A stretch of 52,333 nucleotides of DNA, counting the filler, from Reticulomyxa filosa (lineage: Eukaryota > Protista > Foraminifera), in the NCBI GenBank assembly GCA_000512085.1. It is 13 parts of 13 records of this genome, joined end to end, with 100 filler letters (N's around TTAATTAATTAA, not from the genome) between each part and the next. Parts side by side here need not be neighbours in the genome. Positions count along the whole stretch, not along the records: positions 46,142 to 52,333 come from ASPP01006448.1; 12 more parts are not named here. The stretch is one strand, 5' to 3'. This document shows, in pieces, positions 46,142 to 52,333 of the stretch (its first letter is position 1; every line of letters starts with the position of its first letter). Made by a program: the position numbers and the translations under genes. Under the pieces are notes generated by a model. That model did no database searches and was not told where the DNA came from. It was given only the letters and a program-made list of their open reading frames with translations.

Positions 46142-46212
46142 TTCATGGAGAAAATCAATTATCATCATATGATATCATTTTATGCGTTCAGTTTTCTTTG
46201 CAACATACTGTA
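46142..46212 (-). repeat. Dispersed repeat, copy 2 (matches 9993-10063)
   Basis: Reverse complement is 65/71 identical to 9993-10063. Confidence 0.85.
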
Positions 46213-46947
46213 TTAAATTTATTAATCCAATAATCTTTTCATTGTGTAAAATCTATTTCTTTAAAATTTTAATTTAGTTTATTAATTTTATTTTATTTTT
46301 TTCTTATATTAAATAGTTTTCATACATTCATGACACAATAAACTTTTTGTAATTGTCATTTAATCCACAAATAACATGAACTCTGTTTTATAATTATTAA
46401 TATTAAAAAGATAAATATGATTCAGTTGGTAACGCAAATTAGTATCTTTTCCACGTATAATAATTTACTGAATACTTAAGCAAATGAATTATTGTCATTG
46501 TTAGTATTATACTTTTTGTGTTTGTTTTTCTATTCGTAGTTCGTTAACATAGATTTTGAAAATAGTACAATTTTCGAAGAAATTTTTTGATAGTGTTAGC
46601 AAATGCAAGAAGTTGTGAATTTAAAAATTCTTTAAAAATTATGAAAAAAGTTCTGAGTGAGCCATTTTTATTTGTTTATTCTTCACTGTTGTCTTCTTTT
46701 ACTTTGTTTCCATGATTAATTGTTTTTAACTTCTTTTCTCAAAGAACAAATTTTATCGTAAAGACATTTTGCAAAATCTGACAAATAAAGTCTACTGTAG
46801 TCTCTCTCTTAACACAATGTATACTTGATTTGTTTAAATGTTGAATCGAAGTTGTTTTCTTTAAGGCAAGACAGCGACTCAGTTCTCAAAAAATTCAGAA
46901 AGTGGCAAAACATGGATCTCTTTCATTTGTATCTTTAAACTACAAAC

Positions 46948-47591
46948 ATGCGCCGACGTGCATCAGGGAATTTTAAAAGTTTAATAATGTCAACTGATAA
47001 ATCATCTGCGTCATCTTCAATAGTTTTTGGGCGTGTCTCGAGTTGCGCAAGACTAGCCTTAGTGATAACGGTGATAGTGTTGCTTGCGTTAGTTGAGTGT
47101 AAAATACTTTGGGTGAACGAAATACAACCAAACTTGAAAGGGTTAGAAAAGGTTTTGAACGAGAAGAGCAGACTTAACATAAGCAACGATACTAGAGAAG
47201 AGATAAAAACACTCTTGCGACAATATCCTTTAACATCGGATGCGAAAAAGCTGAAATCATATTTGACTTGGACAAACGAAAAAGTGGCAACGCCCAACAC
47301 CAATGACAAAGGAGAGTTATGTGGGCGATATTGGTTATACAAGCACATAGGCCTGGTGATTGTCCCGATGAACTTGAATATAATCGCATCTACGCACAAA
47401 GAGCAAGCGTCGTCGTATTTGTATTTGACAAATGTGAACAAATTCGTGAAGCTGCATAAGAAGGAAGACTTTCGAAACATAACAATTTGGATATCGGTGA
47501 TAGGAACATGGGAGAGTTATGCCGGCATCGCCACGGCAATGAATTTATCTGCGATCAATGGTGACCATGATGATGATGATGATGATGACCC

Positions 47592-47635
<44 letters not shown>

Positions 47636-49452
47636 TCGATAATGACAATGAGGATAAAAACGTAATGCAAGATCGCATGGTTTGGAAATTTCCATTACTA
47701 TTCACAATGAATGGAAACTACTCAATTGTGATGAAACTTTTATTTTGGAATGGACATTTGGACAACGATATGATTCGATGTCAGTATCACAAGAATCAGC
47801 TGCCAGTATCGACGTTGGGATATGAGCACAATGTGCAAGTTATGTATCGCATCCCGGAGCATTTCCGCTTCTACGGCCAAGTGGAAAGCTGTTGCGAGTT
47901 GTGCACACGCATCAAAGGTTGTGTGGCGTGGAGCAGTGGAGGCAAGGGATCTGATCGCTGTGTATTATATCACCATGGCGACAGAGACAATGATAATGAT
48001 GATAATTTTTTTAGTAATGAATATGATAATAATGATTACGAGCAGATCCAATCTTTTATCGACGTCGTCAAGTTTTCCGATGCCAATGGATATACGTCCG
48101 GTACTAGTCGCAATGAAAACACAAACAGGTATTTGGGGAATATGCTGAACATTCACGCGCCTGCGGAACGGTGTTATATGAAGGCGTTGGACCAAGTGTA
48201 TGCCAGCGGATTTAACTTTGAGATTGACAGTGACGCTAATAAAGACAATCATCTTATATTTCGTCCTTCGACTCTTTTGGTGCCTTTGACTATCGCAAAT
48301 CTTAATGGTGATGCAATAAATACACGCTCGTGGCCCAAACGGCCGCTGTGCTCTCAATTGTGGAGCCACGGACGTTGGCTGTCACTCCAACTTTTAGATC
48401 CGCAGTGGCTCAATTGTGACAACTCACATGTGGAGTCACAGAGACAAAATCCTCTTTGCTTTATTGCCAGGCACGAGTGCACCTTCCCAGGGTCTTCGCA
48501 GCAAAGCAATTGGCCTAATTTCTTTTTTGAACCTTATCAATGCTCTTGGAATGTAATGACCCCACTCCAGATTCGCACTTGCTTGGCCATGTCCAAGTCC
48601 AATGCCAACAAAATCACCAAAATCTTGTTGGCGGGAGATTCTATTATTGGCATTTTTGATCGCGCTTTTCAAAAGACTTTTTTAGGTGTGTTTGATGAAA
48701 AGAAACTCATTTCTATCGATCGATTTTCTCATGCATTGCAAGACCATTCCTATTCCAATATCAGCATTATCAATATCGGCTACAGTGAAAATGTTGACGA
48801 ATTTGATCGCTTGAAGCCCTTTGTTGAACAAGTTCGGCCGGATGTCATCATTCACAACTTCAAGATTATGCATCGCATGTGGCATCAATCGACTACCCAA
48901 TTTCGCCAAGGTTTTCTTCCCTTTTTTTATATTTCTATATTCTCCTTTTTTTTTTTTTTTTTATGCCTCACTATTATCATTCATGCACGTTGCAATAATA
49001 TCAAAAAAAATTATACATATATATACGTGTACCATACAGAAATGATTTATTTTCGTGATGAGTCCAAAAAATTGTTTGACCGAGTTTACGGAACTCAGTC
49101 AGACTCATGGCCTATACGCATTTTATTTGAGTCCCCTTATTTGACGAGTGAACGAGAATATCATGATACTGGCCCCCGCAGTATCATTTTTAATCGTATC
49201 ATGCGTGACATATTGGAGCCAACTGGTTGGATCATTTTGCCCATTTCCGAAATTTCCATGGCCCGAATGTATGACTCGACTCGCCGGGCTTTGGATGGAA
49301 TGCACTTTGATGACAATGTAAGATATGAAATTGCAAGGGTCATTTGGGACTTGTTGTGTCGCTTTGACCGAAAAACGCTATCTGTTCGTGACGACTGGCC
49401 TCACGAAAACTTGAGAAGTAATCCTAACTCTCTCTTTCTCTCGTTGAACTGA
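46948..49452 (+). CDS. Type II membrane protein with PAN/apple-like Cys module and SGNH PC-esterase/NXPE-like domain, ~791 aa; exons 46948-48910 and 49040-49452
   Basis: N-terminal anchor LALVITVIVLLALV; ESCCELCTRIKGCVAWS...CVLY; GRW; FEPYQCSW...CL; ILLAGDS (catalytic Ser); DGMH (DxxH); 129-nt GT-AG poly-T intron. Confidence 0.75.
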
Positions 49453-49933
49453 ATAACGAGGGATTTCTCTTTTTTATTATCCTCTAGTAACAAAACGCAA
49501 ATTTCAATTTTAGTAATGCAACAATCAATAAACCTTATTTCACTTTGCTGTGTTTTCTCTTTTTTGCAAAAAAATGTGACACTGTTTCAAAAAGCAAAGT
49601 AAATGTTGGCAATAAAGTAATGTTGGATCATATTCAAATATTGACAATTTTTTTGAAATTGTAGTGTTTACAAACTTTTTTTTCATTTCAAACGAGCAAC
49701 CAAATATTTGATTGTACTGAGAAATAAGTTAACCAAATGAAGCAAAAAAAGATTCAAATTACACACGTTGTTTCGCAAGCTTTCATTGATTGTTAATGGT
49801 GGCATCAAAAAAAACAAAACCAAATAAAACACAGATAACTCCGTCAATCAGTTTTTTCTGCGCTCGAATTAAAAGTACATTTTTTTTTTTTGTCGTAAAA
49901 AACTCAAAAATGTTTTAAGTTAAAAAATATGAA

Positions 49934-51205
49934 CTATGCAGTAGAGTGATCAGACGTATCTTTTTGTTCAATTTTGCGAATAACAACTTTTTGATACAAG
50001 CCGTCAAAATACAATTTTTTTTCGGCGATATGGACTTGTGAGCGATAATGTGGATCGATCCACTGGGAGATGTCGTGATTCCACAAATCCATGGCAAAAG
50101 GTTCCAAGCGAGTCAAAACTTGTTTCATGAAATATTTCCAAGGATTAAGACGATGAACAGGTTGATGATAATCTACAATGATCAATTCGTCTTTCATAAC
50201 ACGAATGGCTTCATTCAGCGTTTTAACTCGAACGTCAAGCGGTTGTTCATGCAGCAAGAAAAACAATAGTACGCAATCCATGGAACCTGTTTCAAAAGAT
50301 AATTGGGAGCTATTTTGTTGGTCTAATAAAATATCGACAGATGACCTATTGTAATCGTTCTTGTTCACAGTTAGTGTTTTTGGATTTAAACGCTCAATTC
50401 GATAGGCAAGCTTTTCAAAGGTGTTTTTCAATTGAATTGGCGCAATGTCCACTATATGGTAATTGTACTTACTGTCACTAGTGCTTTGTTGTTTGTTATT
50501 CCTATTCAACAGAATCTTCGATACTAAATGCTCACTCAGGTTACCATAAACGCATGCTATTTGTAGAATATTCTTGGTACCACTTTCACCATTTAGGAAA
50601 TGGTCTTGCACATGTCTTAATGCTTCTTCTCGTAAAGCATTAAAATTACCCCATAAAATTAGATTTACCAACCACTGCCGTTCCCAGAATCGAACTGCCT
50701 GTGGATGGAGATAGGCCCACCTTACACACAATTCCCGATTTATTTTTTTTTTTTTAAACTTTATGACTATCTCTATATATTTACCCCTGTATCAAAATTT
50801 TTTTTTGTTTGTTTACCAATAGGTGTGATGAAGATATTCAGGAATAATGTCTTGTTCCCAATGTGTCATGTTGCTATCTTGATCAGGGTCACAATGCGTG
50901 CGACCTTGGCAAATTAAACGAACACCCGCGTCAACGAAATCAGTTTGCTTTGGAACTTTTATCGTTACACCAACAGGAGAAAGAGAGGTCGTATGGATAC
51001 GACTTTCTTGTCGCTTGCAGTGCAGTTCTCTTGTAACTACTTTGCTACAACGTCCCAATGACATTAGCTTCTGTCTGTAATTTGACGTTGCGACACGAAA
51101 AAGCTTGGATTGTGGAAACGAACAGCTCATCGGAAATCTATGGATTAGTGCACTCACTTTGCTTGTATCAAAGAAACTGATTTGTTTTTCCGAGGGACTC
51201 ACCAT
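49934..51205 (-). CDS. rquA: Rhodoquinone biosynthesis protein RquA with N-terminal presequence-like extension; exons 51205 (or 51130)-50817 and 50720-49934
   Basis: Spliced sequence IPEYLHHTYW|WAYLHPQAVRFWERQWLVNLILWGNF, LQIACVYG, DIAPIQL, LLFFLLHEQP, IVDYHQP, LEPFAMDLW, GLYQKVV: the RquA family signature. GT-AG intron 50816-50721 (96 nt). Confidence 0.93.
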
Positions 51206-52333
51206 AGCCCAGTTTGTTCGGTCCAAACATTTTTATTTCTTCTAGTTTTTTGAAAGATATGATGCCAAGCAATTTCTACTTTGATTAAATGATGAAAATA
51301 TTAACTCAAATTTTTGAAATTTGAGCGTTAATTCATATAAATAAACAGAAATTTCAACACAATTGCTGTACTGTTCAATACTTGAATATGGTCAAATTTT
51401 CAACACATGAAAAAACTGGATTAAGATTAAACAGACATCAATTCAATTCCGCAAGTGATTATATACTTTTTGAAGATAGATCAATCTTTTCTTTTATCAA
51501 TAATTGTTAATGCGTTCTTAACATAACAGAAAGGAATTTTGTTAACTTTTGTTGATGTACTTTTTCAATAATAAGTTTGAAAAAATTAATTTTTAACATT
51601 AATTTTGCTAGCAAAACTGACAAATTTTTCAAAGAAAAAAAAAATTAACGTTTCTTTTTCTTGAACAATTTTTGTAAAAAAACATTGCAACGGTTTGTCA
51701 GTGATTTACCATTGAAGCAATAAAAAAAAAATCACTTTTCAGTAAACTTCGTTATCAAGAACCAAACGTCTTAAATACTTAAAAGTAGCTTTACTTGTAT
51801 TACAAAACAAAAGCATAGAAATTAGAAAACATTATGTATAAGAAAGCTAAAGAACATCAAATAAAATACAAAAACAGCAAAAGATATCTTGCAATGAAAT
51901 AGCAGTAGTTCACTAATACAAAATATAAATTCAACTATTTTGGATCAAATGACACAACTAATGAAACGTTGCTTTAGTAAGCTTCAATTTGAACAAATTC
52001 AAGTAAACTAGTCAGTGCATGAAATAAAAGCGAACAATATCTAAACTAAATCATTAAATATATGTATGCAATATCAATTGAAAGGCCAAAATAAAAATCA
52101 AAAAAAGTAAAAGCTAAAACTAATAACAATAAATCAAACTGCAAATAGATATTTTATTATTTAAAAAAGATAAAATATTATATTAATTGAATCAAGCATA
52201 TAATTACGTTTCATAATATGCTGTATTTAGTGAAAATACGTCTAATTGTTGCAAAAGTCAATTGTATTCTATTTATACAATTATTATTTTCATATTAATC
52301 ATAGTGTATTGTTCACAGCAAAAAATTTTACGT

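What the first reader, a model, noticed from the sequence alone, without database searches (positions are those of the whole stretch)
49934..51205. Spliced, probably mitochondrion-targeted rquA: rhodoquinone-based anaerobic respiration in a foraminiferan-like protist
Seen: an intact frame of 391 aa (from ATG 51205) or 366 aa (from ATG 51130), split by a 96-nt spliceosomal intron inside the conserved YWWAY motif, with LQIACVYG in place of the usual SAM-binding xDxGCGxG. The leader MSCSFPQSKLFRVATSNYRQKLMSLGRCSKVVTR is Arg/Ser-rich and lacks acidic residues. Established: RquA converts ubiquinone to rhodoquinone, which lets complex II run as fumarate reductase under hypoxia; it is mostly proteobacterial and patchily distributed in protists, attributed to lateral transfer. 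Inference: a domesticated bacterial gene that equips the mitochondrion for anoxic sediment life. The intron argues against contamination. Eukaryotic rquA has been reported before, possibly for this organism, so novelty must be checked.
Basis: partly seen in the sequence, partly recalled or inferred. Interest (0 to 1): 0.85.

Follow-up and report, generated by a model that had tools for sequence, protein, structure and literature searches.

The report
Known foraminiferan rhodoquinone-making gene rquA
This is the already published gene of the freshwater amoeba Reticulomyxa filosa that probably lets its mitochondria make rhodoquinone and respire without oxygen; the gene, its intron and its bacterial origin were all reported in 2018.

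Summary
The minus-strand gene has two exons (to 50817; 50720-49934) split by a 96-nt GT-AG intron inside the first Trp codon of YWWAY. Exon 2 alone passes the curated RquA cut-off (NF038261, 195.8 bits vs 175). It is 100% identical to GenBank ETO28810.1 of Reticulomyxa filosa, on a 6192-bp contig, the length of this piece. Stairs et al. 2018 (PMC5953543) list ETO28810 as RquA, report its intron as evidence against contamination, give targeting scores and argue lateral transfer. A 2022 preprint used it as the query for other foraminiferan rquA. My tree joins it with other foraminiferan RquA (100/97). Small additions: the annotated start (ATG 51064, 344 aa) is probably 22 codons short, since ATG 51130 gives an acid-free leader of the length seen in other forams; and one of the two SAM-site aspartates appears to be Asn. 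No RNA run was listed, so splicing and start are unconfirmed, and I found no measurement of rhodoquinone in a foraminifer.

The parts
50817..51130 (-). rquA exon 1 from the favoured start ATG 51130 (other in-frame ATGs: 51205; 51064 = NCBI annotation). Encodes the N-terminal extension and the first conserved residues up to the split Trp codon
   Evidence: matches the first 82 residues of ETO28810.1 from ATG 51064
51029..51130 (-). Predicted mitochondrial presequence-like leader (34 residues without D/E, R/K/S/T rich)
   Evidence: composition and hydrophobic moment 0.67; no dedicated predictor could be run
50721..50816 (-). 96-nt GT-AG spliceosomal intron, phase 2, 23% GC, poly-A tracts, two in-frame stops
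   Evidence: same junction as the GenBank model; intron reported in PMC5953543
49934..50720 (-). rquA exon 2: RquA core (class I SAM-methyltransferase fold) and stop codon
   Evidence: NF038261 195.8 bits > cut-off 175; 100% to ETO28810.1
50543..50566 (-). RquA-type altered motif I, LQIACVYG
   Evidence: Q, A, C, Y, G invariant in 127 homologues
50447..50449 (-). Invariant post-motif-I Asp (D174 of ETO28810.1), inferred equivalent of R. rubrum D118
   Evidence: 127/127 Asp; role from PMC9814641
50312..50314 (-). Asn (N219 of ETO28810.1) at the inferred equivalent of R. rubrum D143
   Evidence: column is Asp in 114 and Asn in 13 of 127 homologues

Best explanation
A nuclear, intron-containing rquA gene of Reticulomyxa filosa (ETO28810.1), Group B type, derived from a bacterial gene that entered foraminifera (or a eukaryotic donor) long ago and gained a mitochondrial presequence. 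The protein is imported into mitochondria (inferred), sits on the inner membrane and, with Mn2+ and SAM as amino donor, replaces a methoxy group of ubiquinone by an amino group to give rhodoquinone (shown for R. rubrum RquA, inferred here). Low-potential rhodoquinol lets complex II reduce fumarate, so complex I can keep working under hypoxia (established for other eukaryotes, inferred here). Shown here: gene structure, family membership, grouping with other foraminiferan RquA. Not shown: transcript, localisation, activity, rhodoquinone in cells.
For: Equivalog cut-off passed by exon 2 alone, next family E=0.033. All diagnostic motifs intact (QIACVYG, VDIAP, FFLLHE, DYH, EPF, LYQK). Identity with ETO28810.1, listed as RQUA with intron and targeting scores in PMC5953543. 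Foraminiferan clade 100/97 in a careful tree, 95 in a 128-row quick tree. Orthologues in Ammonia, Bolivina, Nonionella, Elphidium, Sorites, transcribed and up-regulated with complex II under anoxia plus nitrate in N. stella. R. filosa has SDHA/B, complex I, ETF. Mechanism from PMC9814641. Eukaryote-type neighbour gene on the contig.
Against: No RNA run was listed for this stretch. Asn at the inferred D143 site, though 13 other homologues share it and only the double mutant was tested in R. rubrum. Long branch (1.39) and 38-51% identity to other forams. MitoFates-type score of 0.078 on the annotated model. Stairs et al. did not find SDHC, SDHD or COQ2/3/5/6/7 in R. filosa, so the quinone site and the ubiquinone source are unknown.
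Confidence: 0.88

Rival explanations
1. A true rquA orthologue that is weakly active, silent or relaxed in this freshwater, aerobically kept species (a leftover of an anoxic marine ancestry).
For: Long branch, Asn at the D143-equivalent site, no RNA run listed, no COQ genes or SDHC found in this genome by Stairs et al..
Against: Intact frame, canonical splice sites and every invariant motif kept; a blank run search does not show silence.
Confidence: 0.08
2. An ordinary UbiE/Coq5-type or other class I methyltransferase, as the GenBank name 'methyltransferase' suggests.
For: Weak Pfam hits to Methyltransf_25/11 and Ubie_methyltran; JGI names many homologues UbiE.
Against: RquA model E=7.8e-58 above cut-off, no UbiE NCBIfam model at E<0.1; glycine-rich motif I replaced by the RquA motif; named best hits are RquA.
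Confidence: 0.02
3. Bacterial contamination or a very recent bacterial insertion in the assembly.
For: Most hits are bacterial.
Against: Spliceosomal intron with stops, N-terminal extension, GC3 0.36 against 0.82 for a bacterial locus and at least 52% GC for all 80 metagenome loci, eukaryote-type neighbour, clade with other foraminifera, best bacterial identity only about 50%.
Confidence: 0.01

Closest known systems
Reticulomyxa filosa RquA, GenBank ETO28810.1 / UniProt X6NR71 (Stairs et al. 2018, PMC5953543)
   Same: It is this gene: 100% identity over exon 2, same intron, same 6192-bp contig.
   Different: The record starts at ATG 51064 (344 aa); the frame is open 56 codons further up and ATG 51130 (366 aa) looks the better start.
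Foraminiferan RquA of Ammonia, Bolivina argentea, Nonionella stella, Elphidium, Sorites ('rhizarian amoebae group', Group B)
   Same: Same clade, same motifs, similar insertions in the core and long N-terminal extensions.
   Different: Only 45-51% identical over the core; Asn instead of Asp at motif II in R. filosa (and Sorites); a foram-type copy on metagenome contigs L001/L002 has no intron at this site.
Rhodospirillum rubrum RquA (NF038261; Neupane et al. 2022, PMC9814641)
   Same: Family membership above the curated cut-off; altered motif I; post-I Asp kept.
   Different: Eukaryotic leader and intron; three loop insertions; activity untested; R. rubrum sequence itself was not in hand, so residue equivalence rests on spacing.

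Membership tests
RquA (NF038261) | Score above the curated equivalog cut-off | tested here: met
   195.8 bits for exon 2 alone, cut-off 175; 215.6 for the public record P0001
RquA (NF038261) | Class I methyltransferase homology with disrupted motif I (Q-[IV]-A-C-x-Y-G) | tested here: met
   Pfam PF13649/PF08241 hits; motif invariant in 127 homologues
RquA (NF038261) | SAM-ribose-binding Asp (R. rubrum D118) | tested here: met
   Asp at exon-2 residue 91, 127/127; equivalence inferred, not aligned to R. rubrum
RquA (NF038261) | Second SAM-site Asp (R. rubrum D143) | tested here: inconclusive
   Asn here; Asp 114, Asn 13 of 127; the site lies 25 residues after the first Asp in 102 of 108 short homologues, matching 118-to-143; single mutant not reported
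RquA (NF038261) | Converts ubiquinone to rhodoquinone with SAM and Mn2+ | not testable with these tools
   Needs expression and LC-MS
Eukaryotic mitochondrial RquA | Nuclear gene with spliceosomal intron in a eukaryotic contig | tested here: met
   published; splicing not seen in reads
Eukaryotic mitochondrial RquA | N-terminal mitochondrial targeting sequence | tested here: inconclusive
   Composition fits from ATG 51130; published scores 0.61/0.82/0.078 for the 344-aa model; no predictor or localisation here
Foraminiferan (Group B 'rhizarian amoebae') RquA clade | Groups with other foraminiferan RquA | tested here: met
   100/97, with a long-branch caveat; no Group A rows or outgroup in my tree, so Group B rests on PMC5953543
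UbiE/Coq5 C-methyltransferases | Glycine-rich motif I and score above family cut-off | tested here: not met
   PF01209 16.5 bits < 20.1; motif replaced

The most novel reading that the evidence does not exclude
The deposited model is 22 residues short: translation starts at ATG 51130 and gives a proper presequence, which would remove the conflict among the published targeting scores. The gene descends from one acquisition at the base of foraminifera, with the YWWAY intron gained later in the Reticulomyxa line, and it is active with Asn at the second SAM-site position. R. filosa, which can be cultured, would then be a handy system for a first chemical measurement of rhodoquinone in a foraminifer.
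Probability: 0.45. Interest if true: 0.22.

Novelty: already known. Interest (0 to 1): 0.12.

Why it matters
Rhodoquinone-based fumarate respiration is one way foraminifera may endure low oxygen, and rquA is a textbook case of lateral transfer into eukaryotes. But this gene, its intron, targeting prediction and tree position were published in 2018, and foraminiferan rquA has been discussed again in 2022 and 2026. What is left is an annotation fix at the start codon and a bench confirmation.

Tried and rejected
The only joined sequence used was the public record P0001 (ETO28810.1) that the tool returned, in an alignment and two family scans. Exon 1 alone hits no Pfam or NCBIfam family. No solved structure is related by sequence. 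The RNA run search listed none, so read laying could not be used. The metagenome scan returned 80 loci, all at least 52% GC and uninterrupted at YWWAY, so apparently bacterial and of no use for intron comparison. The GTDB scan gave two RquA loci at 39-43% and one weak methyltransferase: no close bacterial donor. The AU test call failed through my syntax and was not repeated. Rejected: UbiE/Coq5 identity, contamination, pseudogene by frameshift, intron read-through (two stops).

Full report
Observation. The piece (46142-52333, 6192 bp) carries two genes. On the minus strand the frame from 51226 runs to a stop just after HHTYW, and a second frame resumes with WAYLHP and ends at 49934. Between them lies a 96-nt stretch, 50816-50721, that starts with GT, ends with AG, is 23% GC, and holds two in-frame stops; removing it rebuilds the first Trp codon of YWWAY. 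The spliced lengths are 391 aa (ATG 51205), 366 aa (ATG 51130) and 344 aa (ATG 51064).

Identity. Exon 2 alone scores 195.8 bits on the NCBIfam equivalog NF038261 (RquA; cut-off 175; E=7.8e-58), with nothing else better than E=0.033. Pfam gives only weak class I methyltransferase hits and UbiE stays under its cut-off. The top protein hit is 100% identical: ETO28810.1 of Reticulomyxa filosa, 344 aa, on a 6192-bp contig. Its sequence equals exon 1 from ATG 51064, one Trp, and exon 2, so the public model uses the same intron. Other hits are proteobacterial RquA (Rhodoferax, Competibacter, Burkholderiales; 43-50%) and foraminiferan proteins from Ammonia, Bolivina and Nonionella.

Motifs. In 127 homologues the altered motif I (Q, A, C, Y, G), the post-I Asp, FFLLHE, DYH and EPF are invariant and all are present here. 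R. rubrum RquA needs D118/D143 (double mutant inactive; PMC9814641). I had no R. rubrum sequence, but in 102 of 108 short homologues an Asp lies exactly 25 residues after the post-I Asp, which matches that spacing. At the second site this protein has Asn, as do 13 of 127 homologues. I read this as a natural variant; it is untested.

Origin. A careful tree of 32 rows puts exon 2 with the other foraminiferan and foram-like sequences at 100/97, as the deepest and a long branch; a 128-row quick tree agrees at 95. The trees have no outgroup and no Group A rows, so they show grouping only, not a donor. GC3 of exon 2 is 0.36, near the neighbour gene's 0.45 and far from a bacterial locus at 0.82. The neighbour on the plus strand looks like a eukaryotic PC-esterase/NXPE/CASD1-type SGNH protein. 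Contamination is excluded.

Start codon. The frame is open for 56 codons above the annotated ATG (2.5% of base shuffles do as well), and GC stays at 40-42% up to 51205 before falling to 23%. From ATG 51130 the first 30 residues have six basic and no acidic residues and 95 residues precede the conserved core, against 95 in Bolivina and Nonionella, 99 in Ammonia and 82 in P0003; the annotated start gives 73 with an acidic residue at 13, and ATG 51205 gives 120 with one at 6. So 51130 is the best guess. Two GTGAGT donor-like sites (51202, 51157) and several acceptor-like sites lie in this region, so a 5' intron is possible and only RNA can settle it. No RNA run was listed. I searched exon by exon by reference and left the joined 366/391-aa step out.

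Mechanism. Established for R. rubrum: RquA transfers the amino group of SAM to ubiquinone with Mn2+, giving rhodoquinone, with no methyl transfer. Established for Pygsuia: the eukaryotic protein is in the mitochondrion-related organelle and the cells hold RQ. Inferred for R. filosa: import, the same reaction, and fumarate reduction by complex II under hypoxia. The genome has SDHA/B, complexes I, III, IV, V, AOX, ETF and SQO, but Stairs et al. found no SDHC/D or COQ genes, which may reflect the fragmented assembly or a dietary ubiquinone source. The organism is thus better seen as an aerobe with a hypoxic option than as an anaerobe.

Novelty. Stairs et al. 2018 (PMC5953543) name R. filosa among the taxa whose rquA has a spliceosomal intron, use that against contamination, place a 'rhizarian amoebae group' in Group B, and give ETO28810 with its full sequence and targeting scores in Supplementary file 1. 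[quoted passage not shown] In the passages read I saw no chemical measurement of RQ in a foraminifer. Verdict: real, correctly read, already known; interest 0.12.

Noticed in passing
window 46948-49452, + strand: 834-codon frame for a probable type II membrane protein: N-terminal hydrophobic segment, poly-D/poly-N runs, weak PAN/apple domain (Pfam E about 0.02), and a C-terminal SGNH-like acyl-esterase region with GDS (48634) and DGMH (49294) motifs; Atlas look-alikes are eukaryotic PC-esterase, NXPE and CASD1-type proteins. Likely an O-acetyltransferase or esterase for glycans.
   Followed up: partly
window 48911-49039, + strand: Candidate 129-nt in-frame GT-AG intron with poly-T tracts inside that frame (donor AAG|GTTTTC, acceptor ATACAG|AA); it has no stop, so the raw ORF reads through it.
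   Followed up: no
window 51230-51127, - strand: An out-of-frame ATG at 51230 in an A-rich context. If 51202-51138 (65 nt, GTGAGT ... CTAAT ... TAG) were spliced out, it would form a 12-codon upstream ORF whose stop overlaps ATG 51130, and ATG 51205 would fall out of frame. A second donor-like site at 51157 could pair in frame with an AG at 51071. Speculative; needs RNA.
   Followed up: partly
L001:2865-3881 and L002:2524-3540: A foram-type rquA (P0003, sister to Ammonia) on 40%-GC metagenome contigs, uninterrupted at YWWAY, next to unannotated ORFs (one with a weak SPRY hit). If genomic, the R. filosa intron is lineage-specific.
   Followed up: partly
P0008, P0010, P0018, P0098: Unnamed environmental RquA proteins with presequence-like N-terminal extensions, probably from further eukaryotes (P0098 foram-type; the others outside the foram clade).
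   Followed up: no
P0122 vs P0123 (Ammonia): The 304-aa Ammonia RquA listed as 'complete' in the 2018 supplement lacks 64 N-terminal residues present in the 368-aa MMETSP model, which has an acid-free basic leader; the same kind of short annotation as suspected here.
   Followed up: partly
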